Source: Macrostomum lignano
Taxonomy: Eukaryota
Direction: 5' to 3'
Assembly: GCA_002269645.1 (NCBI GenBank)
Contig: NIVC01001059.1
Span: forward strand, 62,001 to 126,000
DNA length: 64,000 bases
Shown in pieces: positions 32,201 to 63,140 of this stretch. The position numbers and the translations under genes are program-made. The notes beneath the pieces were generated by a model. The model was not told where the DNA came from. It searched no databases and worked only from the letters and a program-made list of their open reading frames with translations. The first letter of the stretch is position 1. Each line of letters starts with the position of its first letter.

Positions 32201-32502
32201 ATTGGCAATCATTGGCAATCATTAGCAATCATTAGCAATCATTAGCAATCATTAGCAATCATTGGCAATCATTAGCAATCATTGGCAATCATTAGCAATC
32301 ATTGGCAATCATTAGCAATCATGAGCAATCATGAGCAATCGTTGGCAATCATTAGCAATCATTGGCAATCATTAGCAATCATTGGCAATCATAAGCAATC
32401 ATGAGCAATCATTGGCAATCATTAGCAATCATTGGCAATCATAAGCAATCATGAGCAATCATTGGCAATCATTAGCAATCATTAGCAATCATTGGCAATC
32501 AT
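29228..32502. repeat. 10-bp satellite, ~325 copies, three main variants
   Basis: ATTAGCAATC / ATTGGCAATC / ATGAGCAATC. Confidence 0.98.
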
Positions 32503-35362: not shown

Positions 35363-38300
35363 CTACTTGGTCTCTTTCTTCTCTTTCTTCTCTTTCTTCT
35401 CTTTCTTCTCTTTCTTCTCTTTCTTTCCTTTCTCTCCTTTCTCTCCTTTCTCTTTCTTCTCTTTCTTTCCTTTCTCTCCTTTCTCTCCTTTCTCTTTCTT
35501 CTCTTTCTTTCCTTTCTTCCCTTTCTCTCCTTTCTCTCCTTTCTCTTTCTTCTCTTTCTTTCCTTTCTTCTCTTTCTTTTCTTTCTTCTCTTTCTTCTCT
35601 TTCTTTCCTTTCTTCTCTTTCTTCTCTTTCTTCTCCTTCTCGCCCTTCTCGCCCTTCTTCTTAGCCTCGGGCGCCTTGGAAATCTTGTCGTCTGACAATT
35701 TGATCTCCTTCTGGGCCTGGGCGATCCTGCCATTGACCTTGGCCAAGCGCCGTTTCAAGATGTCCTTGTCACTCCTGCGAGAGAAGTAAGCGATGTAGCT
35801 GATGTGCCTGGACACCTTCTCGGCAGTCTCAAGGAGGTCCTTGAAATCCTCGATGCACTTCTCGGCGAGCTTCTGGTCTCGCTTGGCCCGGGCCTTGTTG
35901 GAGGCGACAATGAGCTTGTCGGTCATGCTGTCGGCTTTGCTGGTGGCCTTCTTCAGCTTGACCGCTTCCTTGTCGGCGAGTTTTCGCACGTCCTTGCGGC
36001 GGATGCGCGGCACGGAGTCGGAGGCCGAGCGGACCAGGCGGCGCAGTGGCCGCATAATGCTCAGGACGATGTCTGACACCTCGGAGGCCTGGCGGACAAC
36101 CTCCAGCGAGGCTGCGAGAATTTGGTAGTCGGGTTACGTTTTAGTTAGGCTTGTAATCTTGCCTATTTTTAGTGACACAGCAGCCGATAATTTGTGCGCA
36201 ATGAACCTACTATTTGATACGCTCACGGATCGATGGATTCCAGCTTACCGTATGGCATGAATTGTGTGTAATTAACCTACTATTTGATACGCTCACGGAT
36301 CGATGGATTCCAGCTTACCGTATGGCATGATTTGTGTGTAATTAACCTACTATTTGATACCCTCACGGATCGATGGATTCCAGCTTACCGTATGGCATGA
36401 TTAGTGTGTAATTAACCTACTATTTGATACGCTCACGGATCGATAGATTCCAGCTTACCGTATGGCATGATTTGTGTGTAATTAACCTACTATTTGATAC
36501 CCTCACGGATCGATAGATTCCAGCTTACCGTATGGCATGATTTGTGTGTAATTAACCTACTATTTGATACCCTCACGGATCGATAGATTCCAGCTTACCG
36601 TATGGCATGAATTGTGTGTAATTAACCTACTATTTGATACGCTCACGGATCGATGGATTCCAGCTTACCGTATGGCATGAATTGTGCGCAATGAACCTAC
36701 TATTTGATAAGCTCACGGATCGATGGATTCCAGCTTACCGTATGGCATGAATTGTGCGCAATGAACCTACTATTTGATAAGCTCACGGATCGATGGATTC
36801 CAGCTTACCGTATGGCATGAATTGTGTGTAATTAACCTACTATTTGATACGCTCACGGATCGATGGATTCCAGCTTACCGTATGGCATGATTTGTGTGTA
36901 ATTAACCTACTATTTGATACCCTCACGGATCGATGGATTCCAGCTTACCGTATGGCATGATTTGTGTGTAATTAACCTACTATTTGATACCCTCACGGAT
37001 CGATGGATTCCAGCTTACCGTATGGCATGATTTGTGTGTAATTAACCTACTATTTGATACGCTCACGGATCGATGGATTCCAGCTTACCGTATGGCATGA
37101 TTTGTGTGTAATTAACCTACTATTTGATACACTCACGGATCGATGGATTCCAGCTTACCGTATGGCATGATTTGTGTGTAATTAACCTACTATTTGATAA
37201 GCTCACGGATCGATGGATTCCAGCTTACCGTATGGCATGATTTGTGTGTAATGAACCTACTATTTGATACGCTCACGGATCGATGGATTCCAGCTTACCG
37301 TATGGCATGAATTGTGCGCAATGAACCTACTATTTGATACCCTCACGGATCGATGGATTCCAGCTTACCGTATGGCATGAATTGTGCGCAATGAACCTAC
37401 TATTTAATACCCTCACGGATCGATGGATTCCAGCTTACCGTATGGCATGATTTGTGTGTAATTAACCTACTATTTGATAAGCTCACGGATCGATGGATTC
37501 CAGCTTACCGTATGGCATGATTTGTGTGTAATTAACCTACTATTTGATACCCTCACGGATCGATGGATTCCAGCTTACCGTATGGCATGAATTGTGCGCA
37601 ATTAACCTACTATTTGATACCCTCACGGATCGATGGATTCCAGCTTACCGTATGGCATGAATTGTGTGTAATTAACCTACTATTTGATACCCTCACGATC
37701 GATGGATTCCAGCTTACCGTATGGCATGAATTGTGTGTAATTAACCTACTATTTGATACCCTCACGGATCGATGGATTCCAGCTTACCGTATGGCATGAA
37801 TTGTGTGTAATTAACCTACTATTTGATACCCTCACGGATCGATGGATTCCAGCTTACCGTATGGCATGAATTGTGTGTAATTAACCTACTATTTGATACC
37901 CTCACGAATCGATAGATTCCAGCTTACCGTATGGCATGAATTATGTGTAATTAACCTACTATTTGATACGCTCACGGATCGATGGATTCCAGCTTACCGT
38001 ATGGCATGAATTGTGCGTAATTAACCTACTATTTGATAAGCTCACGGATCGATGGATTCCAGCTTACCGTATGGCATGATTGTGTGTAATTAACCTACTA
38101 TTTGATACGCTCACGGATCGATGGATTCCAGCTTACCGTATGGCATGATTTGTGTGTAATTAACCTACTATTTGATACCCTCACGGATCGATGGATTCCA
38201 GCTTACCGTATGGCATGAATTGTGTGCAATTAACCTACTATTTGATACCCTCACGGATCGATGGATTCCAGCTTACCGTATGGCATGATTTGTGTGTAAT

Positions 38301-41300
38301 TAACCTACTATTTGATAAGCTCACGGATCGATGGATTCCAGCTTACCGTATGGCATGAATTGTGCGTAATTAACCTACTATTTGATACCCTCACGGATCG
38401 ATGGATTCCAGCTTACCGTATGGCATGAATTGTGTGTAATTAACCTACTATTTGATACCCTCACGGATCGATGGATTCCAGCTTACCGTATGGCATGATT
38501 TGTGTGTAATTAACCTACTATTTGATACCCTCACGGATCGATGGATTCCAGCTTACCGTATGGCATGAATTGTGCGCAATTAACCTACTATTTGATACCC
38601 TCACGGATCGATGGATTCCAGCTTACCGTATGGCATGAATTGTGTGTAATTAACCTACTATTTGATACCCTCACGGATCGATGGATTCCAGCTTACCGTA
38701 TGGCATGATTTGTGTGTAATTAACCTACTATTTGATAAGCTCACGGATCGATGGATTCCAGCTTACCGTATGGCATGAATTGTGTGTAATTAACCTACTA
38801 TTTGATAAGCTCACGGATCGATGGATTCCAGCTTACCGTATGGCATGATTTGTGTGTAATTAACCTACTATTTGATAAGCTCACGGATCGATGGATTCCA
38901 GCTTACCGTATGGCATGATTTGTGTGTAATTAACCTACTATTTGATACCCTCACGGATCGATGGATTCCAGCTTACCGTATGGCATGATTTGTGTGTAAT
39001 TAACCTACTATTTGATACCCTCACGGATCGATGGATTCCAGCTTACCGTATGGCATGAATTGTGCGCAATTAACCTACTATTTGATACCCTCACGGATCG
39101 ATGGATTCCAGCTTACCGTATGGCATGAATTGTGTGTAATTAACCTACTATTTGATAAGCTCACGGATCGATGGATTCCAGCTTACCGTATGGCATGATT
39201 TGTGTGTAATTAACCTACTATTTGATAAGCTCACGGATCGATGGATTCCAGCTTACCGTATGGCATGAATTGTGCGTAATTAACCTACTATTTGATACGC
39301 TCACGGATCGATGGATTCCAGCTTACCGTATGGCATGATTTGTGTGTAATGAACCTACTATTTGATACCCTCACGGATCGATGGATTCCAGCTTACCGTA
39401 TGGCATGATTTGTGTGTAATTAACCTACTATTTGATACGCTCACGGATCGATGGATTCCAGCTTACCGTATGGCATGATTTGTGTGTAATTAACCTACTA
39501 TTTGATAAGCTCACGGATCGATGGATTCCAGCTTACCGTATGGCATGAATTGTGTGTAATTAACCTACTATTTGATACGCTCACGGATCGATGGATTCCA
39601 GCTTACCGTATGGCATGATTTGTGTGTAATTAACCTACTATTTGATACCCTCACGGATCGATGGATTCCAGCTTACCGTATGGCATGATTTGTGTGTAAT
39701 TAACCTACTATTTGATACGCTCACGGATCGATGGATTCCAGCTTACCGTATGGCATGATTTGTGTGTAATTAACCTACTATTTGATAAGCTCACGGATCG
39801 ATGGATTCCAGCTTACCGTATGGCATGAATTGTGTGTAATTAACCTACTATTTGATACGCTCACGGATCGATGGATTCCAGCTTACCGTATGGCATGATT
39901 TGTGTGTAATTAACCTACTATTTGATACCCTCACGGATCGATGGATTCCAGCTTACCGTATGGCATGATTTGTGTGTAATTAACCTACTATTTGATACGC
40001 TCACGGATCGATGGATTCCAGCTTACCGTATGGCATGATTTGTGTGTAATTAACCTACTATTTGATAAGCTCACGGATCGATGGATTCCAGCTTACCGTA
40101 TGGCATGATTTGTGTGTAATTAACCTACTATTTGATACCCTCACGGATCGATGGATTCCAGCTTACCGTATGGCATGATTTGTGTGTAATTAACCTACTA
40201 TTTGATACGCTCACGGATCGATGGATTCCAGCTTACCGTATGGCATGATTTGTGTGTAATTAACCTACTATTTGATAAGCTCACGGATCGATGGATTCCA
40301 GCTTACCGTATGGCATGAATTGTGCGCAATGAACCTACTATTTGATACGCTCACGGATCGATGGATTCCAGCTTACCGTATGGCATGAATTGTGTGTAAT
40401 TAACCTACTATTTGATACGCTCACGGATCGATGGATTCCAGCTTACCGTATGGCATGAATTGTGTGTAATTAACCTACTATTTGATACCTCACGGATCGA
40501 TGGATTCCAGCTTACCGTATGGCATGAATTGTGCGTAATTAACCTACTATTTGATAAGCTCACGGATCGATGGATTCCAGCTTACCGTATGGCATGAATT
40601 GTGTGTAATTAACCTACTATTTGATACGCTCACGGATCGATGGATTCCAGCTTACCGTATGGCATGAATTGTGTGTAATTAACCTACTATTTGATACCTC
40701 ACGGATCGATGGATTCCAGCTTACCGTATGGCATGATTTGTGTGTAATTAACCTACTATTTGATAGCTCACGGATCGATGGATTCCAGCTTACCGTATGG
40801 CATGAATTGTGTGTAATTAACCTACTATTTGATACCCTCACGGATCGATGGATTCCAGCTTACCGTATGGCATGAATTTGTGTAATTAACCTACTATTTG
40901 ATACCTCACGGATCGATGGATTCCAGCTTACCGTATGGCATGATTGTGTGTAATTAACCTACTATTTGATACTCACGGATCGATGGATTCCAGCTTACCG
41001 TATGGCATGATTTGTGTGTAATTAACCTACTATTTGATAGCTCACGGATCGATGGATTCCAGCTTACCGTATGGCATGAATTGTGTGTAATTAACCTACT
41101 ATTTGATACCTCACGGATCGATGGATTCCAGCTTACCGTATGGCATGAATTGTGTGTAATTAACCTACTATTTGATACCTCACGGATCGATGGATTCCAG
41201 CTTACCGTATGGCATGATTTGTGTGTAATTAACCTACTATTTGATAGCTCACGGATCGATGGATTCCAGCTTACCGTATGGCATGATTGTGTGTAATTAA

Positions 41301-44300
41301 CCTACTATTTGATACTCACGGATCGATGGATTCCAGCTTACCGTATGGCATGATTTGTGTGTAATTAACCTACTATTTGATACTCACGGATCGATGGATT
41401 CCAGCTTACCGTATGGCATGATTGTGTGTAATTAACCTACTATTTGATACCTCACGGATCGATGGATTCCAGCTTACCGTATGGCATGATTTGTGTGTAA
41501 TTAACCTACTATTTGATAGCTCACGGATCGATGGATTCCAGCTTACCGTATGGCATGATTGTGTGTAATTAACCTACTATTTGATACGCTCACGGATCGA
41601 TGGATTCCAGCTTACCGTATGGCATGATTTGTGTGTAATTAACCTACTATTTGATACCTCACGGATCGATGGATTCCAGCTTACCGTATGGCATGATTTG
41701 TGTGTAATTAACCTACTATTTGATACCTCACGGATCGATGGATTCCAGCTTACCGTATGGCATGATTTGTGTGTAATTAACCTACTATTTGATACTCACG
41801 GATCGATGGATTCCAGCTTACCGTATGGCATGATTGTGTGTAATTAACCTACTATTTGATACCTCACGGATCGATGGATTCCAGCTTACCGTATGGCATG
41901 ATTTGTGTGTAATTAACCTACTATTTGATACCTCACGGATCGATGGATTCCAGCTTACCGTATGGCATGATTTGTGTGTAATTAACCTACTATTTGATAG
42001 CTCACGGATCGATGGATTCCAGCTTACCGTATGGCATGATTGTGTGTAATTAACCTACTATTTGATACGCTCACGGATCGATGGATTCCAGCTTACCGTA
42101 TGGCATGAATTGTGTGTAATTAACCTACTATTTGATACCTCACGGATCGATGGATTCCAGCTTACCGTATGGCATGATTGTGTGTAATTAACCTACTATT
42201 TGATACCTCACGGATCGATGGATTCCAGCTTACCGTATGGCATGATTTGTGTGTAATTAACCTACTATTTGATAGCTCACGGATCGATGGATTCCAGCTT
42301 ACCGTATGGCATGATTGTGTGTAATTAACCTACTATTTGATACTCACGGATCGATGGATTCCAGCTTACCGTATGGCATGAATTTGTGTGTAATTAACCT
42401 ACTATTTGATACCTCACGGATCGATGGATTCCAGCTTACCGTATGGCATGATTTGTGTGTAATTAACCTACTATTTGATACTCACGGATCGATGGATTCC
42501 AGCTTACCGTATGGCATGATTTGTGTGTAATTAACCTACTATTTGATAGCTCACGGATCGATGGATTCCAGCTTACCGTATGGCATGATTGTGTGTAATT
42601 AACCTACTATTTGATAGCTCACGGATCGATGGATTCCAGCTTACCGTATGGCATGAATTGTGTGTAATTAACCTACTATTTGATACCCTCACGGATCGAT
42701 GGATTCCAGCTTACCGTATGGCATGATTTGTGTGTAATTAACCTACTATTTGATACTCACGGATCGATGGATTCCAGCTTACCGTATGGCATGATTTGTG
42801 TGTAATTAACCTACTATTTGATAGCTCACGGATCGATGGATTCCAGCTTACCGTATGGCATGAATTGTGTGTAATTAACCTACTATTTGATACCTCACGG
42901 ATCGATGGATTCCAGCTTACCGTATGGCATGATTGTGTGTAATTAACCTACTATTTGATACCTCACGGATCGATGGATTCCAGCTTACCGTATGGCATGA
43001 TTTGTGTGTAATTAACCTACTATTTGATACCTCACGGATCGATGGATTCCAGCTTACCGTATGGCATGATTTGTGTGTAATTAACCTACTATTTGATAGC
43101 TCACGGATCGATGGATTCCAGCTTACCGTATGGCATGATTTGTGTGTAATTAACCTACTATTTGATACCTCACGGATCGATGGATTCCAGCTTACCGTAT
43201 GGCATGATTTGTGTGTAATTAACCTACTATTTGATACTCACGGATCGATGGATTCCAGCTTACCGTATGGCATGATTTGTGTGTAATTAACCTACTATTT
43301 GATACCTCACGGATCGATGGATTCCAGCTTACCGTATGGCATGATTGTGTGTAATTAACCTACTATTTGATACCACGGATCGATGGATTCCAGCTTACCG
43401 TATGGCATGATTGTGTGTAATTAACCTACTATTTGATACCTCACGGATCGATGGATTCCAGCTTACCGTATGGCATGATTTGTGTGTAATTAACCTACTA
43501 TTTGATACTCACGGATCGATGGATTCCAGCTTACCGTATGGCATGATTTGTGTGTAATTAACCTACTATTTGATACCTCACGGATCGATGGATTCCAGCT
43601 TACCGTATGGCATGATTTGTGTAATTAACCTACTATTTGATACCTCACGGATCGATGGATTCCAGCTTACCGTATGGCATGATTGTGTGTAATTAACCTA
43701 CTATTTGATACCCTCACGGATCGATGGATTCCAGCTTACCGTATGGCATGATTGTGTGTAATTAACCTACTATTTGATACCTCACGGATCGATGGATTCC
43801 AGCTTACCGTATGGCATGATTGTGTGTAATTAACCTACTATTTGATACTCACGGATCGATGGATTCCAGCTTACCGTATGGCATGATTGTGTGTAATTAA
43901 CCTACTATTTGATACCTCACGGATCGATGGATTCCAGCTTACCGTATGGCATGAATTGTGTGTAATTAACCTACTATTTGATACCTCACGGATCGATGGA
44001 TTCCAGCTTACCGTATGGCATGATTTGTGTGTAATTAACCTACTATTTGATACTCACGGATCGATGGATTCCAGCTTACCGTATGGCATGATTGTGTGTA
44101 ATTAACCTACTATTTGATACCTCACGGATCGATGGATTCCAGCTTACCGTATGGCATGATTTGTGTGTAATTAACCTACTATTTGATACCTCACGGATCG
44201 ATGGATTCCAGCTTACCGTATGGCATGATTTGTGTAATTAACCTACTATTTGATACCTCACGGATCGATGGATTCCAGCTTACCGTATGGCATGATTTGT

Positions 44301-47300
44301 GTGTAATTAACCTACTATTTGATACTCACGGATCGATGGATTCCAGCTTACCGTATGGCATGATTGTGTGTAATTAACCTACTATTTGATACCTCACGGA
44401 TCGATGGATTCCAGCTTACCGTATGGCATGATTGTGTGTAATTAACCTACTATTTGATACCTCACGGATCGATGGATTCCAGCTTACCGTATGGCATGAT
44501 TGTGTGTAATTAACCTACTATTTGATACCTCACGGATCGATGGATTCCAGCTTACCGTATGGCATGATTTGTGTGTAATTAACCTACTATTTGATACCTC
44601 ACGGATCGATGGATTCCAGCTTACCGTATGGCATGAATTGTGTGTAATTAACCTACTATTTGATACTCACGGATCGATGGATTCCAGCTTACCGTATGGC
44701 ATGATTTGTGTGTAATTAACCTACTATTTGATACCCTCACGGATCGATGGATTCCAGCTTACCGTATGGCATGATTGTGTGTAATTAACCTACTATTTGA
44801 TACTCACGGATCGATGGATTCCAGCTTACCGTATGGCATGATTGTGTGTAATTAACCTACTATTTGATACTCACGGATCGATGGATTCCAGCTTACCGTA
44901 TGGCATGATTGTGTGTAATTAACCTACTATTTGATACCTCACGGATCGATGGATTCCAGCTTACCGTATGGCATGATTTGTGTGTAATTAACCTACTATT
45001 TGATACCTCACGGATCGATGGATTCCAGCTTACCGTATGGCATGATTGTGTGTAATTAACCTACTATTTGATACCTCACGGATCGATGGATTCCAGCTTA
45101 CCGTATGGCATGATTGTGTGTAATTAACCTACTATTTGATACTCACGGATCGATGGATTCCAGCTTACCGTATGGCATGATTGTGTGTAATTAACCTACT
45201 ATTTGATACTCACGGATCGATGGATTCCAGCTTACCGTATGGCATGATTTGTGTGTAATTAACCTACTATTTGATACCTCACGGATCGATGGATTCCAGC
45301 TTACCGTATGGCATGATTTGTGTGTAATTAACCTACTATTTGATACCTCACGGATCGATGGATTCCAGCTTACCGTATGGCATGATTTGTGTGTAATTAA
45401 CCTACTATTTGATACTCACGGATCGATGGATTCCAGCTTACCGTATGGCATGATTTGTGTGTAATTAACCTACTATTTGATACTCACGGATCGATGGATT
45501 CCAGCTTACCGTATGGCATGATTGTGTGTAATTAACCTACTATTTGATACCTCACGGATCGATGGATTCCAGCTTACCGTATGGCATGATTGTGTGTAAT
45601 TAACCTACTATTTGATACCTCACGGATCGATGGATTCCAGCTTACCGTATGGCATGATTTGTGTGTAATTAACCTACTATTTGATACCTCACGGATCGAT
45701 GGATTCCAGCTTACCGTATGGCATGATTTGTGTGTAATTAACCTACTATTTGATACCTCACGGATCGATGGATTCCAGCTTACCGTATGGCATGATTGTG
45801 TGTAATTAACCTACTATTTGATACCTCACGGATCGATGGATTCCAGCTTACCGTATGGCATGATTGTGTGTAATTAACCTACTATTTGATACCTCACGGA
45901 TCGATGGATTCCAGCTTACCGTATGGCATGATTTGTGTGTAATTAACCTACTATTTGATACTCACGGATCGATGGATTCCAGCTTACCGTATGGCATGAT
46001 TTGTGTGTAATTAACCTACTATTTGATACTCACGGATCGATGGATTCCAGCTTACCGTATGGCATGATTTGTGTAATTAACCTACTATTTGATACCTCAC
46101 GGATCGATGGATTCCAGCTTACCGTATGGCATGATTGTGTGTAATTAACCTACTATTTGATACCTCACGGATCGATGGATTCCAGCTTACCGTATGGCAT
46201 GATTGTGTGTAATTAACCTACTATTTGATACTCACGGATCGATGGATTCCAGCTTACCGTATGGCATGATTTGTGTGTAATTAACCTACTATTTGATACT
46301 CACGGATCGATGGATTCCAGCTTACCGTATGGCATGATTTGTGTGTAATTAACCTACTATTTGATACCTCACGGATCGATGGATTCCAGCTTACCGTATG
46401 GCATGATTTGTGTGTAATTAACCTACTATTTGATACTCACGGATCGATGGATTCCAGCTTACCGTATGGCATGATTTGTGTGTAATTAACCTACTATTTG
46501 ATACTCACGGATCGATGGATTCCAGCTTACCGTATGGCATGATTTGTGTGTAATTAACCTACTATTTGATACTCACGGATCGATGGATTCCAGCTTACCG
46601 TATGGCATGATTTGTGTGTAATTAACCTACTATTTGATACTCACGGATCGATGGATTCCAGCTTACCGTATGGCATGATTTGTGTGTAATTAACCTACTA
46701 TTTGATACCTCACGGATCGATGGATTCCAGCTTACCGTATGGCATGATTTGTGTGTAATTAACCTACTATTTGATACTCACGGATCGATGGATTCCAGCT
46801 TACCGTATGGCATGATTTGTGTGTAATTAACCTACTATTTGATACCTCACGGATCGATGGATTCCAGCTTACCGTATGGCATGATTTGTGTGTAATTAAC
46901 CTACTATTTGATACCTCACGGATCGATGGATTCCAGCTTACCGTATGGCATGATTTGTGTGTAATTAACCTACTATTTGATAGCTCACGGATCGATGGAT
47001 TCCAGCTTACCGTATGGCATGATTTGTGTGTAATTAACCTACTATTTGATACCTCACGGATCGATGGATTCCAGCTTACCGTATGGCATGATTTGTGTGT
47101 AATTAACCTACTATTTGATACCTCACGGATCGATGGATTCCAGCTTACCGTATGGCATGATTTGTGTGTAATTAACCTACTATTTGATACCTCACGGATC
47201 GATGGATTCCAGCTTACCGTATGGCATGATTTGTGTGTAATTAACCTACTATTTGATACTCACGGATCGATGGATTCCAGCTTACCGTATGGCATGATTT

Positions 47301-53300: not shown

Positions 53301-56300
53301 GATGGATTCCAGCTTACCGTATGGCATGATTTGTGTGTAATTAACCTACTATTTGATACCCTCACGGATCGATGGATTCCAGCTTACCGTATGGCATGAT
53401 TTGTGTGTAATTAACCTACTATTTGATACCCTCACGGATCGATGGATTCCAGCTTACCGTATGGCATGATTTGTGTGTAATTAACCTACTATTTGATACC
53501 TCACGGATCGATGGATTCCAGCTTACCGTATGGCATGATTTGTGTGTAATTAACCTACTATTTGATACCTCACGGATCGATGGATTCCAGCTTACCGTAT
53601 GGCATGATTTGTGTGTAATTAACCTACTATTTGATACCCTCACGGATCGATGGATTCCAGCTTACCGTATGGCATGATTTGTGTGTAATTAACCTACTAT
53701 TTGATACCCTCACGGATCGATGGATTCCAGCTTACCGTATGGCATGATTTGTGTGTAATTAACCTACTATTTGATACCCTCACGGATCGATGGATTCCAG
53801 CTTACCGTATGGCATGATTTGTGTGTAATTAACCTACTATTTGATACCCTCACGGATCGATGGATTCCAGCTTACCGTATGGCATGATTTGTGTGTAATT
53901 AACCTACTATTTGATACCCTCACGGATCGATGGATTCCAGCTTACCGTATGGCATGATTTGTGTGTAATTAACCTACTATTTGATACCCTCACGGATCGA
54001 TGGATTCCAGCTTACCGTATGGCATGATTTGTGTGTAATTAACCTACTATTTGATACCCTCACGGATCGATGGATTCCAGCTTACCGTATGGCATGATTT
54101 GTGTGTAATTAACCTACTATTTGATACCCTCACGGATCGATGGATTCCAGCTTACCGTATGGCATGATTTGTGTGTAATTAACCTACTATTTGATACCCT
54201 CACGGATCGATGGATTCCAGCTTACCGTATGGCATGATTTGTGTGTAATTAACCTACTATTTGATACCTCACGGATCGATGGATTCCAGCTTACCGTATG
54301 GCATGATTTGTGTGTAATTAACCTACTATTTGATACCTCACGGATCGATGGATTCCAGCTTACCGTATGGCATGATTTGTGTGTAATTAACCTACTATTT
54401 GATACCTCACGGATCGATGGATTCCAGCTTACCGTATGGCATGATTTGTGTGTAATTAACCTACTATTTGATACCTCACGGATCGATGGATTCCAGCTTA
54501 CCGTATGGCATGATTTGTGTGTAATTAACCTACTATTTGATACCTCACGGATCGATGGATTCCAGCTTACCGTATGGCATGATTTGTGTGTAATTAACCT
54601 ACTATTTGATACCCTCACGGATCGATGGATTCCAGCTTACCGTATGGCATGATTTGTGTGTAATTAACCTACTATTTGATACCCTCACGGATCGATGGAT
54701 TCCAGCTTACCGTATGGCATGATTTGTGTGTAATTAACCTACTATTTGATACCCTCACGGATCGATGGATTCCAGCTTACCGTATGGCATGATTTGTGTG
54801 TAATTAACCTACTATTTGATACCCTCACGGATCGATGGATTCCAGCTTACCGTATGGCATGATTTGTGTGTAATTAACCTACTATTTGATACCCTCACGG
54901 ATCGATGGATTCCAGCTTACCGTATGGCATGATTTGTGTGTAATTAACCTACTATTTGATACCTCACGGATCGATGGATTCCAGCTTACCGTATGGCATG
55001 ATTGTGTGTAATTAACCTACTATTTGATACCCTCACGGATCGATGGATTCCAGCTTACCGTATGGCATGATTTGTGTGTAATTAACCTACTATTTGATAC
55101 CCTCACGGATCGATGGATTCCAGCTTACCGTATGGCATGATTTGTGTGTAATTAACCTACTATTTGATACCTCACGGATCGATGGATTCCAGCTTACCGT
55201 ATGGCATGATTTGTGTGTAATTAACCTACTATTTGATACCTCACGGATCGATGGATTCCAGCTTACCGTATGGCATGATTTGTGTGTAATTAACCTACTA
55301 TTTGATACCCTCACGGATCGATGGATTCCAGCTTACCGTATGGCATGATTTGTGTGTAATTAACCTACTATTTGATACCCTCACGGATCGATGGATTCCA
55401 GCTTACCGTATGGCATGATTTGTGTGTAATTAACCTACTATTTGATACCCTCACGGATCGATGGATTCCAGCTTACCGTATGGCATGATTTGTGTGTAAT
55501 TAACCTACTATTTGATACCCTCACGGATCGATGGATTCCAGCTTACCGTATGGCATGAATTGTGTGTAATTAACCTACTATTTGATACCTCACGGATCGA
55601 TGGATTCCAGCTTACCGTATGGCATGATTTGTGTGTAATTAACCTACTATTTGATACCCTCACGGATCGATGGATTCCAGCTTACCGTATGGCATGATTT
55701 GTGTGTAATTAACCTACTATTTGATACCCTCACGGATCGATGGATTCCAGCTTACCGTATGGCATGATTTGTGTGTAATTAACCTACTATTTGATACCCT
55801 CACGGATCGATGGATTCCAGCTTACCGTATGGCATGAATTTGTGTGTAATTAACCTACTATTTGATACCCTCACGGATCGATGGATTCCAGCTTACCGTA
55901 TGGCATGATTGTGTGTAATTAACCTACTATTTGATACTCACGGATCGATGGATTCCAGCTTACCGTATGGCATGATTTGTGTAATTAACCTACTATTTGA
56001 TACCCTCACGGATCGATGGATTCCAGCTTACCGTATGGCATGATTTGTGTGTAATTAACCTACTATTTGATACCTCACGGATCGATGGATTCCAGCTTAC
56101 CGTATGGCATGATTTGTGTGTAATTAACCTACTATTTGATACCTCACGGATCGATGGATTCCAGCTTACCGTATGGCATGATTTGTGTGTAATTAACCTA
56201 CTATTTGATACCTCACGGATCGATGGATTCCAGCTTACCGTATGGCATGATTTGTGTGTAATTAACCTACTATTTGATACCTCACGGATCGATGGATTCC

Positions 56301-59300
56301 AGCTTACCGTATGGCATGATTTGTGTGTAATTAACCTACTATTTGATACCCTCACGGATCGATGGATTCCAGCTTACCGTATGGCATGATTTGTGTGTAA
56401 TTAACCTACTATTTGATACCTCACGGATCGATGGATTCCAGCTTACCGTATGGCATGATTTGTGTGTAATTAACCTACTATTTGATAAGCTCACGGATCG
56501 ATGGATTCCAGCTTACCGTATGGCATGATTGTGTGTAATTAACCTACTATTTGATACCTCACGGATCGATGGATTCCAGCTTACCGTATGGCATGATTTG
56601 TGTGTAATTAACCTACTATTTGATACCTCACGGATCGATGGATTCCAGCTTACCGTATGGCATGATTGTGTGTAATTAACCTACTATTTGATACCTCACG
56701 GATCGATGGATTCCAGCTTACCGTATGGCATGAGTGTGTGAATCCGCAGTTTGCCTTGGCAATTCCGTTCCTCACTGCGCTTAAGAATTTGCTGCTGAGA
56801 GTCGCCAACAGTGGAAACTATGAGCCCTTGACGGTGATCGAACTGAGCCAGGTCCGTTGGCTGAGGGGTTTGAAATGGTTATTTAAGAAGAACCCGTCGG
56901 TTTAACTTGTTGGCAGAAATTCAACATTGACTTACGATCGACCTTCTTGAAGCCCTCTCCTCCCAGTTGATCTCAACGTTTCGCGACAGCAGATCCCGGA
57001 TCTTGTCTGCAATTGGTTGTTCAGTTATACAGTCCGTTGTTGGTCATTACCAGAATGAGTAGAAAACCGAGCACTTACTGGTATATTTCGCCTTCATCGA
57101 AACCTTGTTAACTTTTCCAACTCTGCAGGTGGCAGAGATGATGTCATCTACGAACTGCGGCTCGACCAGCTCGCTGAATGTGCTTGTCTTGAAGCTGTGG
57201 ATGCCGTGCGGCACCGTTGCAATGCTGTCGAGCTGCTTTGCCTGGATGTCATCGCCAACTCCGACGGTGATGATTCGGCAGCCCAAGGCTTTGACCTTCG
57301 CGGCCTCCTTGATCGGGTCGACCTTGCTGTTGGAGGCTCCGTCGGTAACCAGAATGACGACACTCTCGGCGCCCTTGCTCTCGCCACCCCGATAGCCATT
57401 GACCTTGTTGAGCAGAAAGCGGCGGAAGGCCTTGATGGCGTCTCCGGTGTAGGTGGAGCCTGGAGAATATTCCATCTCCATCACTCGAGTGGTCATGGAG
57501 TCCAGGTGGTAGTGGGCGACGTAGTTGAAGATCACCTTCATTCTCTGCACGCTGGAGAACTTGAGCAGAGCCACGTGCGTGTTGTCGCGAGAAACGTCCA
57601 GCTTCTTTGCTACGGCAACAATGAAGCGCCGAATGTGCTCGAAGTTCCTGCCGCGAACGGAGTCAGAGGAGTCGATTAGGAAAGCGACGTCCATGCGCTT
57701 GCTGCAGGTGCGCTTGCACTTGGCTGATCCCGTCCACAGAATGTCATCGCACTGGTTGCGGCTGTTGACTCGCTGGGTGTACACCTTGATTGGCACAATC
57801 TTGCCATTGCAATGGCCAGTTTCCACCGCCGGCTTGGGGCAAGAGCAGCGGATCTCCTTGGTGCGTCTGCGTTGGATGCAGCCGCGAGTGAGGCGGTTGA
57901 ACTCGTAGAAGGTCTCATACATGATCTTGAAGTTGTTCACACACGGCAGGTATTTGCGGGTGGGCTTTGGGCAGGCTGAAATGCATTCATCAGTGATAGT
58001 TTTTTCATTCGACAAGACGGAATGCCATAAATTGTTTAAAAACTTACCGCATCTCGCAGTCTTAGTCTTAGTCACTGCTTTGCAATGACCGCCAGATTCG
58101 CCACCACTGATCAGCTTGTACTGCAGAATGGTGGTCTTCCTGTACTGGTTCTCGCATTTGCCAATGGTTTTCTTCGGACCGGGGCAGCCACAGCGGACTC
58201 TACTGTCCTTGGAGGAGCTTTCGCAAATGCCCTTCTTTTTATTTAACTTGAAGTAGGTAGTCGTAATTTTTTTAAACATTTTTTCGCACGGACCCGCCTT
58301 TGTGTCCGGCTTCGGACACGCGCAGCGCACCTTCTTAAAGTCCTGCTTCACAACCTTCTTGCAGCCGTAGCCCTTGGGCACGTACTCAACCCGGTGGATG
58401 GATTTGTAGTTGCCGACGCAGTCGCCATTGATTAAATACGGGTGCGGGCACACTGCAATTTCGGGCAATACAGAGTTAAGCAAGCTGGGTTATTAGCTTG
58501 AGTAATCCATCTAAGACACTCACGTGGCCTCTCGCAGTGGAAGGTGAGAACTCGGGCAACCAGGCCGTGGATGTCCTGGAACTCGCGCAGGCCGAAGATG
58601 AACACGCGGCCCTCGGGTCCGGCCAGCTTGGCCAGCTGGGCCCTGTTCTGCTTGGACTGCTCGCCGATGGCGATCGTGACGAAGAAAACGCCAGACCGCC
58701 TGACCAGCTTGGACTCGTAGAACTGGTCAACCTCGCCGTTGGATTCGGCACCGTCCGTGAGCAGGATGGTGACGTGGGGCACGTCCTCTCGCATGCCGGC
58801 GTGCTTCTGCCACATCTTGGTGCGCACCTCGTGCAGCGCCTCGCCGAGGAAGGTGAGACCGGGCTCGTACTGCATGGCCTCGATCTTCTTCAGGATCTCC
58901 TCGTGCGAGTTGTGCTCCCAGCTGTCCAGGTCCATGACAATCTTGTTCTTGTGGCTAAAGCGCATCACGCCGATTCGCTGGCGCTCACCGTTCTTCATAT
59001 AGAACTGCTGGACAACGTCGCGAACGAAGTTTTTCATGATGTAGAAGTTGTGCTCGGTCACGGTCAGGGACGAGTCCAGCATGAAGATCACGTCGGCCTT
59101 CTGAATGCAGACTGAGAAGTTTGAGAGAGTTTACCTTAGATGGATTCTTGCTTGAAAGTTGAAAGGAGAAAAGGTGCGCTTATTTTCTAGCATAGCCTTG
59201 CATCCGCGCCAGTTACTCACTGGGAACGTTCGGGCAGTCACTGGGGTGCACGCATTTGCCCTTGTGCAGCAGGAAGTACGGCCGGCACTCGCACTGCGGC

Positions 59301-62300
59301 CGTCGCTCCTTGGGGCACTTGCTGAACAGCACGGGCTCGTTGCAGGTCCTGGGCAGCCGGAGCCGCGCACTCGGAAATACTGGTGCCCGGGGCAGGGCGT
59401 GGGTTCGTTGCACTTTCCCTTGTAGTAGTACTTCTTGCCGGTGCACACTGCGGGTAGGCAATGCGGCAGAAAGAAATTGGTCGGGCTTCAAATATTTGCC
59501 CGAATTCCACTTGTGTGGATATGAGCTCCACTATTCATTCAATCTGAAAAAGAGGATCTGACACTACTGGGAAGAACCAGTTTGATTCGGATCCTTACTC
59601 TTCACGCAGCGGCCATCCTTGGTCTTCTTGAAGCCGGGGTCGCAGCCGACTTTGTAACATTTTCGGTCAGAGCGCAGCTTGTAGCCCTTGGGGCACTTTA
59701 TGGCTGAAATTCGAGACGTGAAATCCTCGTGAGCGCTCATAGCTAATCCCAGCTGAGTCTCACCACCTGCACTGGGCCTGCCTGCCTACCTTTCTTGCAG
59801 ATGTCTCGGAACAGGATCTGGCCTGGAGGGCAGTACTTGCGCACCTTCGGCATGCATTTGCCATCGAAGAATTCCGTTTTGGGCGGACAGTCGACTGAAT
59901 GTTTTTTGTTGCAATGGGCGGAGGAATTGAGTAGGGAATGGAAAAACTGATTGGCATGGATGCGAAGTCAGGCAATCAATTTAATTGAATTCAGTTTAAT
60001 GCAACAGAATATTTTAACTGCAGTGTTCTGCGAAAAAGGAATGCAATGATAAATAAAATCTCTGCTTTGCACTGCACTGTGGCAACAAGGCGGATTAAGC
60101 TGGGCTACATTTGCTTGAATTGAAAGCAAAGCAGATGCTGGAACTGCACTGTGAACAATGGAGTAGCAAAAGGTAGGATTTCGTTTTAGGATACGGCTGC
60201 GAGGGGAGATCAATTCGCCTCACCTTTTCTGCAGGTGCAGGTGGCTTTGTTCAGCGCCAGGCCCTTGCGGCAGCGCATTTTGCATTCGCACCGGCAGTCG
60301 CTCTTCTGGTCAAAGTTTCGGCCCGGGCACTTCTTCTTGCACTCTACAAGTCAATTAGACAGCTTTGGTGGAGCACTGGAGCTTGTTTCAGTCAAGGGGA
60401 TTGGGGATTAACTTCTTGCGCAAGGCAAGGCTTTGGAACTCAATATTTACCACAGGCACAGAGCTTAGCGTTGAGTTTCTTTTCTCCTTTGCAGGATTTC
60501 TTGCAGACCTTGGCCTTCTTGGGCTTCGAGGGCACGTGTCGGGGCACGCAGACGCAGCCCTTGACGAGGATCTCCGACTCCTTGCAGCTCTTCTTGCAGT
60601 CATCGCTGACGGACACATTGGGGACGCACTTGCACGGGACCACCAGCATAAAGCCCTTGGGGCATTTCAGGCTGCACTTGGGTTTCACTGGAATTGAGGG
60701 AGCAAAATTCATACTGCCCATGCTGCTCAAAGCAAAATACGCGCTGCTCAGTGCTCTAACGACGCTTCTGACTCACATGGGACGCACTCTCGGGCGATCA
60801 TCTGCAGTCCCTTGCCGCAGGACTTGAAGTCTTTAACTGAGGCAGCCTTGCCGCCTTCGCACAGGATGTCGGTGATAACCTTGCCGACTTTGCCGAGGTC
60901 TTCGAAATCGTTGACAACCGTGACGTACTTCTTATTGCTGGCCAGCTTCTCCAGGGCGCTCCTGGAGATGCCGGTGCCGATGCCGAGCGCCAAGACGGAG
61001 GCGCCCATCTTGCGCAGCTTGTTGGACTCAGCAACGGGGTTGGCGCGGCCGTTGGCGCGACCGTCGGTAAGAAGCACCACTACCGGCTTGGCCTCGGAGC
61101 GGTGGCCGTTCGCCTTCTGGAAGCCCTGCTCGCGGATCAGCTGGAAAGCCTCGCCGGTGACGGTCTTGCCGGATTTGTACCTGAATTTTGCCAGGTAGTT
61201 CGTGTGCGACCAATTCGGCATGGGTGAAGTACTGGGAAGCTGAATGAGCAACTTTTCCATTTTCAGAGGGTCGCTAATCAAACTCTAACAGCTTCTTAGT
61301 TTACAGCTCAAAAAGCAGACGGTAACCTAGTTGTAGCTTCTCATGTTGCGAGCGTGCATTGCAAGCGCTCGGGCATCTGCCCTCTTTTGTACTAAGGTGT
61401 CTGTCTGCTTGTGGTGATAGGCAGGAGGCACAGCTAGACTCAGAGGCTTACTCAAGGTCGTGCAGCAGGAACTGCAGGATGGCGTTGCGTTCCGCGGGCT
61501 TTCTCATGGAGTAGTCCTTCAGCTTGATGACCATGTCCGCCTTGTCCGAGAAGATCACGACGCCGAAGCGGAAGTTGCTGGATTTGCGCAGCAGTTTGGA
61601 GACGATCTCGTGAATGAATTTCGTCACCAGAGCGAAGTTCCTCCGGCCGACGGAGTGGGACGAGTCCAGTGCGAAGAAAATGTCCGCCTTTTGGCTGCAG
61701 CCTGGATTGCGTGGTGGGGCCGGCGTGATTGTTCTGGGATTTGCAGCAGAGTTCAAAGCGAAAGCCGGCAAGCAGGCAGACAGTCGGACCGGGCCCGGGG
61801 CTTGGGGCTTTCCCAGGGATTGACTGGCCAGGAGGCAATGCCAGAAAGATTAAAAGCAGGCTTTGGCGACGATGCAGAAGCAAGGAAGAATTCCCAAAAG
61901 GTTTTTAATTTGTTGTTTATAATGTACTGTTTTAGGTTGAAAATATCGTTTGGGTCGCAGTAGTGCTTGTATTAAGTCTTGTTTACACTTTTGTCAACAG
62001 ATGTTTCCTTTAGCGTAGAGGCCTGAACTACTTGCAGTAGTGTGGTTCAAAGATGAATTTAAATTAACGAATTACTACGAGAAATTCTAGGCAGTGCATG
62101 TACCGAGTTTTTTTACATAATTTTGCGAAACTTACGTAATGCTGAATTTTTTTTGCAAAAACAAGTTGAAGATGCATTGTTAGAGACAGTCAATAATTTT
62201 GGGGTTTCACATCGCACAGACAGACAGGTAGGTGCCTAGCACATTGTCTATGGCTCTGATGGACAGGTAGGTGCCTCGCACACTGTCTATGGCTTTGATG

Positions 62301-63140
62301 AACAGGTAGGTGCCTCGCACACTGTCTATGGCTTTGATGAACAGGTAGGTGCCTCGCACACTGTCTATGGATCTGATGGACAGGTAGGTGCCTCGCACAC
62401 TGTCTATGGCTCTGATAGACAGGTAGGTGCCTCGCACACTGTCTATGGCTCTGATGGACAGGTAGGTGCCTCGCACACTGTCTATGGCTCTGATGGACAG
62501 GTAGGTGCCTCGCACACTGTCTATGGCTCTGATGGACAGGTAGTGTCTAGCATACTGTCTATGGCTCTGATGGACAGGTAGGTGCCTCGCACACTGTCTA
62601 TGGCTCTGATGGACAGGTAGCAGTTTAAACGTCCCTGCATTGGAAATTGTTAGTTGAATCCTGAGTCCTTTCAGCGGCTCCCTGAGGCGAACTCATAGAT
62701 ACGAGCTAAGCGTACAAGGATAGGAAAAGCGGAAGCGACAAGCGGAGCATGCAACCAGGTTGGAACGCTGCAGCGCAGTTGCAGAACGGTCATTGAAAGC
62801 AATAGCAAATTTCTGCACAAATAAAAATATCGGTACTTACTTTTACCTGAGAATTGAGGTGTATGCACGTAGTTAGGCGTGTTAGAAGTGTGTCAATAGT
62901 CAGGTTAATTAGTCAAAATGGCAAAAACCAAGGCGTGACTGAGAAGGGCCACTGACTCAATTTCTGTTCTAGTGCAGACTTTGTGAGGCTGTAGGCCTTC
63001 GGAAAGCCGAGTGGCTACTCACCATCCTTGCTGATCTCAGTCAGCGTGCTGAGCACATCGCTGTCAGCGGCTGCAACATTGCCTTGGAGCACCAGCGGCA
63101 GCAGCAGCAGCGCCGGGAACAGTGACATCAGGCGCCGCAT
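35363..63140 (-). CDS. Predicted secreted multi-vWA, Cys-rich protein with Lys/Glu tail (~1470 aa; exons 63023-63140, 61452-61701, 60777-61231, 60451-60687, 60224-60343, 59790-59894, 59599-59703, 59221-59447, 58524-59111, 58048-58452, 57079-57975, 56936-57006, 56776-56860, 35363-36111)
   Basis: Signal peptide MRRLMSLFPALLLLPLVLQGNVAA; three vWA domains (DSSHS, DSSLT, DSSDS, each with a later T and TDG); CXCXC repeats; TIL-like domain; five 4-Cys repeats. All introns are GT-AG with compatible phases. One 1-bp deficit at 59351-59353 must be restored. The link to the 35363-36111 exon is inferred from phase. Confidence 0.75.
35372..35660 (-). repeat. Coding 9-bp repeat (EKK/GEK/GKK tripeptides)
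   Basis: CT-rich 9-bp units on the + strand, in frame with a non-repetitive helical region on the - strand. Confidence 0.85.
36204..56733. repeat. 70-bp tandem satellite array, ~295 copies, 20.5 kb
   Basis: Unit AACCTACTATTTGATACCCTCACGGATCGATGGATTCCAGCTTACCGTATGGCATGATTTGTGTGTAATT; head-to-tail with no spacers. Confidence 0.99.
57079..61701 (-). CDS. Core vWA / Cys-rich exons of the secreted protein (high-confidence portion)
   Basis: vWA folds recognisable directly, e.g. KADIFFALDSSHSVGRRNFALVTKFI, KADVIFMLDSSLTVTEHNF and KRMDVAFLIDSSDSVRGRNFEHIRRFI, each followed by VVLLTDG-like strands. Confidence 0.92.
62208..62622. repeat. 39-bp minisatellite in the first intron region of the vWA gene, ~10 copies
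   Basis: Unit GACAGGTAGGTGCCTCGCACACTGTCTATGGCTCTGATG. Confidence 0.93.

What the first reader, a model, noticed from the sequence alone, without database searches (positions are those of the whole stretch)
35363..63140. Novel-looking secreted mosaic: SP - vWA - CXCXC silk-like - TIL - vWA - 5x 4-Cys - vWA - helical - Lys/Glu tail
Seen: the domain order above, with MIDAS residues intact in vWA1 and vWA3 (DxSxT in vWA2) and Lys-rich Cys modules. Established: CXCXC repeats occur in Chironomus Balbiani-ring silk proteins; vWA domains occur in matrix and mussel-byssus proteins; Macrostomum adhesive proteins use Lys/Arg-rich tracts and TIL/vWF-type modules. I know no protein with this combination. 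Inference: candidate glue, mucus, eggshell or basement-matrix component.
Basis: partly seen in the sequence, partly recalled or inferred. Interest (0 to 1): 0.8.

Follow-up and report, generated by a model that had tools for sequence, protein, structure and literature searches.

The report
Flatworm secreted multi-vWA matrix protein gene
This is one real Macrostomum lignano gene for a large, lysine-rich secreted protein with three vWA adhesion domains. It belongs to an uncharacterised flatworm-only family and its peptides appear in a published footprint proteome, but the copy in this window is broken as assembled.

Summary
A minus-strand gene runs from the ATG at 63140 to the stop at 35363. I modelled 14 GT-AG exons.

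The window is 100% identical to M. lignano assembly GCA_002269645.1. NCBI annotates the gene (BOX15_Mlig011403g1) as only 529 aa, because a 1-nt frameshift sits inside TIL near 59350. The post-vWA3 domain carries six compensating indels and lacks about 53 aa. Intron 13 (20.6 kb) is a 69-bp satellite of 298 copies.

Published footprint mass spectrometry (PMC6410801, Dataset S2) holds 17 peptides of this protein. They include the splice junction across the satellite intron and the correct TIL frame, so it is one gene and an intact copy is expressed.

Relatives are a 54%-identical paralogue (three copies), three transcriptome homologues and a monogenean partial homologue. The 4-Cys module was found only in flatworms.

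It is not Mlig-ap1 or Mlig-ap2, a matrilin or a collagen VI. The most likely role is an externally secreted, polycationic cross-linking scaffold. This is a lineage-specific variant of multi-vWA matrix proteins and of moderate interest.

The parts
63023..63140 (-). Exon 1: ATG, signal peptide, ...TEISKD; donor G|GTGAGT, phase 1
   Evidence: Identical to the N-terminus of NCBI PAA72813.1.
61452..61701 (-). Exon 2: first half of vWA1, with MIDAS motif DSSHS
   Evidence: Pfam VWA E 1.4e-12. The acceptor is fixed by P0005, which reads ISKD|GCSQKADIFF. Peptide ADIFFALDSSHSVGR was observed.
60777..61180 (-). Exon 3: second half of vWA1
   Evidence: Pfam VWA E 2.1e-17. Peptides SEAKPVVVLLTDGR, YVTVVNDFEDLGK and VITDILCEGGK were observed.
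60451..60687 (-). Exon 4: three C-x3-C-x9/10-C-x-C units (CKC, CVC, CACEC), Lys-rich
   Evidence: All Cys are invariant in the four-sequence alignment A1.
60224..60343 (-). Exon 5: two more units (CRCEC, CTC), of the CX10CXCXC type
   Evidence: Pfam CXCXC (PF03128) is hit only below threshold, and only in homologue P0003.
59790..59894 (-). Exon 6: two CP-x-G 2-Cys hairpin units
   Evidence: Peptide KYCPPGQILFR was observed.
59599..59703 (-). Exon 7: two more 2-Cys hairpin units
59221..59447 (-). Exon 8: one hairpin plus the TIL domain. One nucleotide is missing near 59350, which shifts the frame.
   Evidence: TIL reaches 30.6 bits over the full profile after repair. Peptides CNEPTPCPGHQYFR and TCNEPVLFSK show that the repaired frame is the one translated.
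58524..59111 (-). Exon 9: vWA2, with DSSLT. A second acceptor-like AG lies 8 nt further on, at 59103.
   Evidence: Pfam VWA E 1.7e-31. The junction peptide CVHPSDCPNVPICIQK uses the acceptor at 59111.
58048..58452 (-). Exon 10: 4-Cys modules 1 to 3
   Evidence: P0001 and P0006 show the 72-nt intron 58047-57976 spliced out, reading ARC|ACPKP.
57079..57975 (-). Exon 11: 4-Cys modules 4 and 5, and vWA3 (DSSDS)
   Evidence: Pfam VWA E 1e-37. Peptides NQCDDILWTGSAK, GAESVVILVTDGASNSK, IITVGVGDDIQAK, QLDSIATVPHGIHSFK and TSTFSELVEPQFVDDIISATCR were observed.
56936..57006 (-). Exon 12: linker helix and the start of the post-vWA3 domain ('domain X'). It has a -1 indel relative to the intact copy.
   Evidence: Frameshift-aware alignment to P0006.
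56722..56860 (-). Exon 13: remnant of domain X, with indels +1, -2, -1, -8 and +2. The second half of the domain (about 53 aa) is absent. The donor TAC G|GTAAGC lies in the first satellite unit.
   Evidence: P0006 reads ...SSSFSTLPY|ASLEVV.
36190..56740 (.). 69-bp satellite, 298 copies at 97% identity. It fills intron 13 (56721-36112). Each unit carries CATACG|GTAAGC on the gene strand.
   Evidence: Tandem Repeats Finder. 298 copies of CATACGGTAAGC were counted.
35363..36111 (-). Exon 14: helical region (about 146 aa), then the 103-aa Lys/Glu/Gly tail, then the TAG stop
   Evidence: Peptides CIEDFKDLLETAEK and HISYIAYFSR were observed. AlphaFold2 predicts four long helices. The tail DNA is a 9/51-bp tandem repeat at 35371-35658.

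Best explanation
What is shown:
- The locus is the M. lignano gene BOX15_Mlig011403g1 (transcripts RNA815_464 / RNA1310_1588.1).
- It encodes a secreted protein of about 1,470-1,520 aa, about 164 kDa, pI about 9.7, with 15% Lys and 4.8% Cys.
- It belongs to a family detected so far only in flatworms or in unidentified transcriptomes. The conserved core is CX10CXC repeats, 2-Cys hairpins, TIL, vWA, five 4-Cys beta-modules, vWA, an alpha/beta domain, a helical bundle and a basic tail. The Macrostomum proteins add an N-terminal vWA.
- An intact version of the protein is made and is recovered from material the worms leave on glass.

Inferred mechanism:
- It acts as an extracellular cross-linking scaffold released to the outside, in a surface or mucus film or in glue-associated material.
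- The three vWA domains, whose MIDAS motifs are complete or nearly so, bind partner proteins through a divalent cation.
- The disulfide-rich modules form stiff spacers between the vWA domains.
- The C-terminal alpha/beta domain and helical bundle provide folding or self-association.
- The polycationic Lys-rich tail (net charge about +29) holds the protein electrostatically to polyanions such as sulfated glycans, or to negatively charged surfaces.

State of the window copy: as assembled it cannot encode the full protein. It has a TIL frameshift and a scrambled, truncated post-vWA3 domain. This is either an assembly error next to a 20-kb satellite (which I favour, about 60%) or a genuinely decaying duplicate (about 40%).
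For: - Gene model: all 14 exons have GT-AG borders and matching phases.
- Identity: the window is 100% identical to GCA_002269645.1 contig NIVC01001059.1, and PAA72813.1 equals the frameshifted reading.
- Domains.
- Family: a paralogue at 54% identity and 94% coverage, plus homologues at 28-35% identity in which every Cys is invariant. Lys-rich tails are also present in P0003, P0013 and P0036.
- Protein evidence: 17 peptides on the sheet footprints_Trypsin_intact_1 of PMC6410801 Dataset S2, score 70.8, ranking above tubulin. They include both junction peptides. None were found in the stored top part of the tail-tissue dataset.
- The closest solved vWA domain is in mussel byssal PTMP1, at 92 bits for a single domain.
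- AlphaFold2 on the C-terminus gives pLDDT 82: a beta-alpha-beta-beta-alpha-beta-beta domain followed by four helices of 25-38 residues.
Against: - There is no localisation or knock-down data for this gene.
- The footprint sample also contains a vitellogenin-like protein, tubulin and mucins, so presence there does not prove a role in secretion or adhesion.
- The stored supplementary files are truncated, so absence from the tail and pull-down datasets is weak evidence.
- The monogenean partial homologue (P0019), and the wider spread of the 4-Cys module in trematodes and cestodes, would suit a general internal matrix role as well.
- Oligomerisation and polyanion binding are inferred from composition and a predicted fold only.
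- The structure prediction rests on a four-sequence alignment.
Confidence: 0.5

Rival explanations
1. It is an internal extracellular-matrix or basement-membrane adaptor that works like matrilin, AMACO or collagen VI. Its presence in the footprint proteome would then be carry-over from tissue.
For: - The vWA domains score best against collagen VI alpha-3 over the whole chain.
- The transcript's best human hit is COL12A1.
- Relatives in parasitic flatworms are automatically named 'Matrilin 2' and 'Collagen alpha-3(VI)'.
- The plan of vWA domains, Cys-rich spacers and a C-terminal helical module parallels the matrilins.
- The footprint sample clearly contains cellular proteins.
Against: - It ranks above tubulin in the footprint sample, and its peptides are not in the stored top-scoring part of the tail-tissue dataset.
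- Pfam finds no EGF domain and there are no collagen Gly-X-Y repeats.
- The long polycationic tail resembles secreted cohesive proteins more than matrilins.
Confidence: 0.3
2. It is a dedicated component of the duo-gland temporary adhesive: a third glue or cohesion protein working beside Mlig-ap1 and Mlig-ap2.
For: - It was detected in adhesive footprint samples.
- It is Lys-rich, like the KR regions of Mlig-ap1.
- Its vWA domains are closest to mussel byssal PTMP1.
- Its 4-Cys module also builds 225-aa tandem repeats in other M. lignano secreted proteins (Mlig000884 and Mlig000808). That period is close to the 221-aa repeat reported for Mlig-ap2.
Against: - The authors' screens and model need only ap1 and ap2, and RNAi of ap2 alone abolishes adhesion.
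- Known flatworm adhesives are based on vWD-C8-TIL, not vWA.
- The 4-Cys module, and at least one partial family homologue, occur in parasitic flatworms (monogenean, trematodes, cestodes), so neither is confined to free-living worms.
- Peptides of the 225-aa-repeat proteins were not found in the stored datasets.
Confidence: 0.12
3. The window copy is a true pseudogene or decaying duplicate, and the finding describes a dead gene. The protein seen by mass spectrometry would then come from other copies.
For: - There is an uncompensated frameshift in TIL, six indels and a deletion of about 159 nt in exons 12-13.
- Amino-acid substitutions against P0001 and P0006 (ERNAILQF against ERKAMLQF; CKKSC against CRKSC) show that several distinct copies exist.
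- The variant peptide QLDSIATAPHGIHSFK shows another expressed copy.
- The indels sum to 0, -3 and -6, and the missing stretch of about 53 codons also leaves the downstream frame intact, which is unlike random sequencing error.
Against: - All changes cluster in about 200 bp at the edge of a 20-kb satellite, while the other 4.2 kb is nearly perfect. That pattern is typical of a poorly polished long-read consensus.
- The other assembly also shows local gene-model errors (KTVTEGERPPPEAKP in P0001 and P0006 against the peptide-supported SEAKPVVVLLTDGR).
- My searches recovered only one NCBI-annotated locus (g1) for this gene, although an intact 4.7-kb transcript exists.
Confidence: 0.4

Closest known systems
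Matrilins and AMACO (VWA2): vertebrate multi-vWA matrix adaptors
   Same: They are secreted. They have two or three MIDAS-bearing vWA domains separated by small disulfide-rich modules, and a C-terminal helical module. One flatworm relative is automatically named 'Matrilin 2'.
   Different: No EGF domains were detected. The spacers are CX10CXC repeats, TIL and a flatworm-specific 4-Cys module. The C-terminus is predicted to be an alpha/beta domain plus an intramolecular four-helix bundle and a Lys/Glu tail, not a short heptad coiled coil.
Mussel proximal thread matrix protein 1 (PTMP1, PDB 4CN8)
   Same: It is the best single-domain match among solved structures for vWA1 (92 bits, E 3e-25 per domain). 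It is a secreted matrix protein of an external holdfast.
   Different: PTMP1 is only two vWA domains (454 aa). It has no Cys-rich repeats, TIL, helical domain or basic tail.
Collagen VI alpha-3 and collagen XII
   Same: The highest whole-chain vWA scores are against collagen VI alpha-3 (E 3e-72 and 1e-68). COL12A1 is the transcript's best human hit.
   Different: There is no collagen triple-helix region. The high score is the sum of many weak vWA matches of 15-46 bits each.
Macrostomum adhesive proteins Mlig-ap1 and Mlig-ap2 (PMC6410801)
   Same: Same species. All are secreted, rich in Cys and Lys, contain TIL and were detected in the same footprint proteome.
   Different: ap1 and ap2 are 5,407 and 14,794 aa, built on vWD-C8-TIL, C-lectin, EGF, LDL and TSP-1 domains and long repeats, with no vWA reported. 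This protein has no vWD.
BR3P / VEGF-C 'silk homology' CXCXC repeats (Pfam PF03128)
   Same: Two units match CX10CXCXC exactly (CKGEKKLNAKLCACEC and CPGRNFDQKSDCRCEC) and three more are CX9-10CXC.
   Different: The window protein gives no PF03128 hit. Homologue P0003 reaches 14.9 bits against a cut-off of 15. The match is to a motif only.

Membership tests
vWA domain superfamily (PF00092) | Rossmann-like vWA fold matched above the Pfam gathering score | tested here: met
   Three domains at 110-130 bits, and 48.6 + 64.3 bits for the split vWA1, against a cut-off of 23.8.
vWA domain superfamily (PF00092) | MIDAS motif DxSxS, plus the Thr and Asp residues | tested here: met
   DSSHS with GKTVT and LLTDG; DSSLT with GLTFL and LLTDG; DSSDS with GSTYT and LVTDG. 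vWA2 has Thr in place of the second Ser.
TIL domain (PF01826) | Full-length match above the gathering score | tested here: met
   30.6 bits against 24.5, profile positions 1-55 of 55, but only after one nucleotide is restored near 59350. As assembled, only profile positions 15-55 match (25.7 bits).
Matrilin family | EGF-like domains between the vWA domains | tested here: not met
   No EGF family hit up to E = 5 in the Cys-rich regions.
Matrilin family | C-terminal heptad coiled-coil oligomerisation domain | tested here: inconclusive
   The C-terminus is helical, but AlphaFold2 predicts four antiparallel helices that form a bundle within one chain. Oligomeric state cannot be tested with these tools.
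Collagen VI / FACIT collagens | Gly-X-Y triple-helical region | tested here: not met
   There is no Gly-X-Y stretch in the 1,471-aa translation and no collagen Pfam hit.
Flatworm adhesion proteins ap1 / ap2 | vWD-C8-TIL core (ap1), or vWD, TIL, LDL, TSP-1 and RP-1/RP-2 repeats (ap2) | tested here: not met
   Pfam finds only VWA and TIL. The ap1 and ap2 architectures are taken from PMC6410801, PMC8621496 and PMC9229212.
Flatworm adhesion proteins ap1 / ap2 | Expression in adhesive gland cells, and a non-adhesive RNAi phenotype | not testable with these tools
   No in situ or RNAi data were found for RNA815_464.
CXCXC repeat (PF03128, BR3P / VEGF-C) | Pfam match above the gathering score of 15 bits | tested here: inconclusive
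   No hit for the window protein. Homologue P0003 scores 14.9 bits. The CX10CXCXC motif is present twice by inspection.
Flatworm vWA / 4-Cys family (this work) | Colinear core: CXC repeats, TIL, vWA, five 4-Cys modules, vWA, domain X, helical region | tested here: met
   Alignment A1 with P0002, P0003 and P0013 has all Cys invariant. The 4-Cys profile scores E 1e-105 to 4e-52 against family members. Domain X matches in P0019 and P0036 by hhalign at 97-98% probability.

The most novel reading that the evidence does not exclude
The protein is an unrecognised third structural component of the flatworm temporary-adhesion footprint. It would be a polycationic, vWA-based cohesive cross-linker built partly from a flatworm-specific 4-Cys beta-module. 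That module also makes up the 225-aa repeats of other secreted M. lignano proteins, which may be Mlig-ap2-like.
Probability: 0.12. Interest if true: 0.65.

Novelty: new variant of a known kind. Interest (0 to 1): 0.4.

Why it matters
- It defines a flatworm-restricted family of secreted multi-vWA proteins. The family contains two modules with no Pfam model and no structural match: the 4-Cys three-stranded module, and the alpha/beta domain joined to a helical bundle.
- The protein is physically present in the best-studied flatworm adhesion proteome but has never been examined. That makes it a ready candidate for in situ hybridisation and RNAi in a tractable model.
- It shows that the reference annotation truncates the gene to a third of its length because of a single-base frame error. 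That matters to anyone mining this genome.
- The intron satellite, with 298 tandem copies of a consensus 5' splice site starting at the exon border, is a natural test case for how the spliceosome chooses a splice site.

Tried and rejected
- My first exon-2 acceptors (61800 or 61823) were wrong. NCBI protein P0005 places it at 61701.
- I first read exon 10 as one 1,374-nt exon. Homologues show a 72-nt intron inside it.
- I first placed the exon-13 donor at 56776 (CGCA|GTGAGG). P0006 and the peptide IDSSSFSTLPYASLEVVR place it in the first satellite unit, at 56722.
- Foldseek searches of both AlphaFold2 models against the PDB found nothing significant. The best hits were E 0.03 for generic helical bundles and E 0.18 for the 4-Cys array.
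- A profile search with the C-terminal alignment through the word-indexed database returned one fragment only, because low-complexity words saturated the candidate list.
- Literature searches for the gene and transcript identifiers found nothing.
- RNA815_464 is absent from the stored supplements of the positional RNA-seq paper.
- The SRA run that holds homologue P0013 could not be tied to a species.
- Peptides of the 225-aa-repeat proteins were not found in the stored mass-spectrometry files, so the proposed link to Mlig-ap2 stays untested.
- The missing half of domain X is nowhere else in the window.
Full report
**Where the gene is and how it is built**

The finding lies on the minus strand. 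Three-frame translation and inspection of splice sites gave a first model. Related proteins and a second pass refined it.

The final model has 14 exons, all with GT-AG borders and consistent phases.

About 20.5 kb of the 27.8-kb span is not coding. Intron 13 (56721-36112) is filled by a 69-bp satellite of 298 copies at 97% identity.

**Domains**

Pfam confirms three vWA domains and a TIL domain.

Between vWA1 and TIL there are two kinds of small Cys-rich unit:
- five units of C-x3-C-x9/10-C-x-C, two of which are exact CX10CXCXC motifs;
- a run of CP-x-G 2-Cys hairpins.

Pfam's CXCXC repeat model (PF03128) is not hit by the window protein. It reaches 14.9 bits against a cut-off of 15 in one homologue only.

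Between vWA2 and vWA3 there are five 4-Cys modules with spacing C-x-C-x9-C-x19-23-C-x10.

The mature protein is about 164 kDa, with pI 9.7, 15% Lys and 4.8% Cys.

**The window copy is not intact**

Exon 8 lacks one nucleotide inside TIL (GGCTGCCC^AGGACC, near 59350). Translated as it stands, the ORF ends at residue 529.

The window is 100% identical to M. lignano assembly GCA_002269645.1, contig NIVC01001059.1. NCBI's protein for this gene (BOX15_Mlig011403g1, PAA72813.1, 529 aa) is exactly that frameshifted reading.

I aligned the near-identical UniProt model A0A1I8HJC7 (P0006) to exons 12-13 with an aligner that allows frameshifts. It shows six indels: -1, +1, -2, -1, -8 and +2. They cancel in sets, so the frame stays open.

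The second half of the post-vWA3 domain (PYTIRK...SSSFS, about 53 aa) is absent from the window. The exon runs straight from ...LRIH into the first satellite unit.

Restoring the single nucleotide in TIL gives an open 1,471-codon frame through to the Lys/Glu tail.

These defects could be assembly errors or real decay, and I cannot tell which.
- For error: the changes cluster in about 200 bp at the edge of the satellite. The other assembly also has local gene-model errors. My searches recovered only one NCBI-annotated locus for this gene, although an intact transcript exists.
- For a real decaying duplicate: the indels compensate one another. Several distinct copies demonstrably exist, from amino-acid differences and a variant peptide.
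- I put the odds at about 60:40 in favour of error.

**One gene, and a real protein**

The supplementary Dataset S2 of Wunderer et al. 2019 (PMC6410801) reports mass spectrometry of adhesive footprints left by M. lignano on glass.

Its sheet footprints_Trypsin_intact_1 contains an entry for a 4,735-nt transcript with both UTRs, a Pfam VWA hit and COL12A1 as best human hit. The entry has 17 peptides, 14.8% coverage and a score of 70.8. Shorter fragment entries for the same gene carry the identifiers RNA815_464, RNA1310_1588.1, RNA1509_6924 and RNA1509_14059.

The peptides run from vWA1 (ADIFFALDSSHSVGR) to the last exon (CIEDFKDLLETAEK, HISYIAYFSR). Four of them settle structural points:
- TCNEPVLFSK shows that TIL is translated in the repaired frame.
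- CVHPSDCPNVPICIQK spans the junction of exons 8 and 9.
- KLLVSGLVR lies in the half of domain X that the window lacks.
- IDSSSFSTLPYASLEVVR spans the splice across the satellite intron.

Of the 18 peptides that are not allele variants, 16 are encoded by the repaired window gene.

The authors did not discuss this protein. The sample also holds a vitellogenin-like protein, tubulin and mucins, so presence there is suggestive and not specific. The peptides were not in the stored, truncated parts of the tail-tissue and lectin pull-down datasets.

**Relatives**

Database searches found:
- the same gene in another assembly (A0A1I8IU13 and A0A1I8HJC7);
- a paralogue at 54% identity present in three copies (BOX15_Mlig006812g1-3, 1,621 aa). 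Its gene spans 31 kb, and its introns are also full of tandem repeats;
- three full-length homologues at about 30% identity from transcriptome-type contigs of unknown species (P0003, P0013, P0036);
- a partial homologue in the monogenean Cichlidogyrus, annotated 'Matrilin 2'.

In the four-sequence alignment every Cys of the core is invariant. The three transcriptome homologues lack vWA1 but keep a Lys-rich C-terminal tail.

I searched 1.84 billion representative proteins with a profile of the 4-Cys region. It found 24 proteins. Of the 20 whose source I looked up, all those that carry a species name are from Platyhelminthes: Macrostomum, Echinococcus, Dibothriocephalus, Cichlidogyrus, Trichobilharzia, Paragonimus, Calicophoron and Echinostoma. 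The module occurs there together with vWA, vWD, ShKT, CTCK and SUEL-lectin domains.

Domain X is recognisable in the monogenean protein and in P0036 (hhalign probability 97-98%).

**Structure**

AlphaFold2 on the C-terminal alignment gave pLDDT 82 and pTM 0.64. It predicts a beta-alpha-beta-beta-alpha-beta-beta domain followed by four helices of 25-38 residues joined by short turns, which is a helical bundle.

The 4-Cys array gave pLDDT 78 and is predicted as a string of three-stranded antiparallel sheets.

Neither model has a significant match in the PDB, and Pfam has no model for either region.

**Comparison with known families**

By sequence, the closest solved vWA domain is in mussel byssal PTMP1, at 92 bits for one domain. 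Collagen VI alpha-3 scores higher overall only because it sums many weak domain matches.

- It is not a matrilin: no EGF domain was detected, and the C-terminus is not a simple coiled coil.
- It is not a collagen: there are no Gly-X-Y repeats.
- It is not Mlig-ap1 or Mlig-ap2. Those are 5,407 and 14,794 aa and built on vWD-C8-TIL.

In how it is likely to work, it most resembles matrilin- or AMACO-type multi-vWA adaptors with an added polycationic tail.

**Likely function (inferred)**

I think it is a secreted scaffold that cross-links partners through its MIDAS-bearing vWA domains. The disulfide-rich modules would keep it rigid. The Lys-rich tail would anchor it electrostatically to polyanions.

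Its recovery from footprint samples at a rank above tubulin favours release to the outside, in a surface or mucus film or glue-associated material, at about 0.5.

Two rivals remain:
- an internal matrix role, at about 0.3;
- a dedicated glue role, at about 0.12.

**Verdict**

The 'no known protein' claim needs qualifying. The protein is uncharacterised, but it is already deposited in databases, has a paralogue, and has homologues at least in a monogenean and in unidentified transcriptomes. Its 4-Cys module is widespread in flatworms. It is a lineage-specific variant of multi-vWA matrix proteins and of moderate interest.

Noticed in passing
window 36190-56740 (intron 13): A 69-bp satellite of 298 copies at 97% identity. 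Every unit carries a consensus 5' splice site (CATACG|GTAAGC) on the gene strand. The array begins inside the last codons of exon 13 (..HTLMPY), so the working donor is the first of 298 near-identical donors. The missing second half of domain X borders this array directly, which suggests a deletion or a mis-join driven by the satellite.
   Followed up: partly
window 59103-59111: Two acceptor-like AGs lie 8 nt apart (TTCTCAG|TCTGCATTCAG|AAG). Using the downstream one would restore the frame after the -1 shift in TIL (-1 - 8 = -9) and give ...TFP|KADVIFMLDSS. The observed peptide CVHPSDCPNVPICIQK uses the upstream acceptor.
   Followed up: partly
window 33331-34730: A 35-bp tandem array of 40 copies at 97% identity lies just downstream of the gene's stop. 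It is open in several frames, with ORFs of 500-600 aa. UniProt model A0A1I8HJC7 wrongly reads into it at its C-terminus (LQVDKSCGGSEISRWTRAVEAQGSPGGQEL).
   Followed up: partly
window 63266-63553: The N-terminus of UniProt model A0A1I8IU13 (residues 14-109) is translated from GC-rich sequence upstream of the true ATG. That model therefore lacks the signal peptide and is wrong at its 5' end.
   Followed up: yes
window 1-32505 and 62223-62620: The window is packed with unrelated tandem arrays. Examples are (TAACTAAC)n at 1-1432, a 17-bp array at 6884-8941, a 43-bp array at 21094-23148, (CATTAGCAAT)n at 29227-32505 and a 39-bp array in intron 1. Many of them create long spurious ORFs. The introns of the paralogue locus L001 look the same.
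   Followed up: no
P0016 / P0018 (BOX15_Mlig000884, Mlig000808), found with the 4-Cys profile: Other M. lignano secreted proteins are built from tandem 225-aa repeats, each made of four related Cys modules with poly-Lys linkers. The period is close to the 221-aa RP repeat reported for the adhesive Mlig-ap2. Members of the same sequence cluster carry vWD and SUEL-lectin labels. The link to Mlig-ap2 could not be verified.
   Followed up: partly
PMC6410801 Dataset S2, sheet footprints_Trypsin_intact_1: The variant peptide QLDSIATAPHGIHSFK occurs alongside QLDSIATVPHGIHSFK, and QAK (window, P0001) differs from QEK (P0006) at IITVGVGDDIQAK. At least three distinct copies or alleles of the gene therefore exist, and at least two are expressed.
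   Followed up: partly
window 35371-35658: The Lys/Glu tail is encoded by an imperfect 9/51-bp tandem repeat, (TCTCTTTCT)n on the plus strand. Its length probably varies between copies. The other assembly's gene model has a much shorter, different tail.
   Followed up: no
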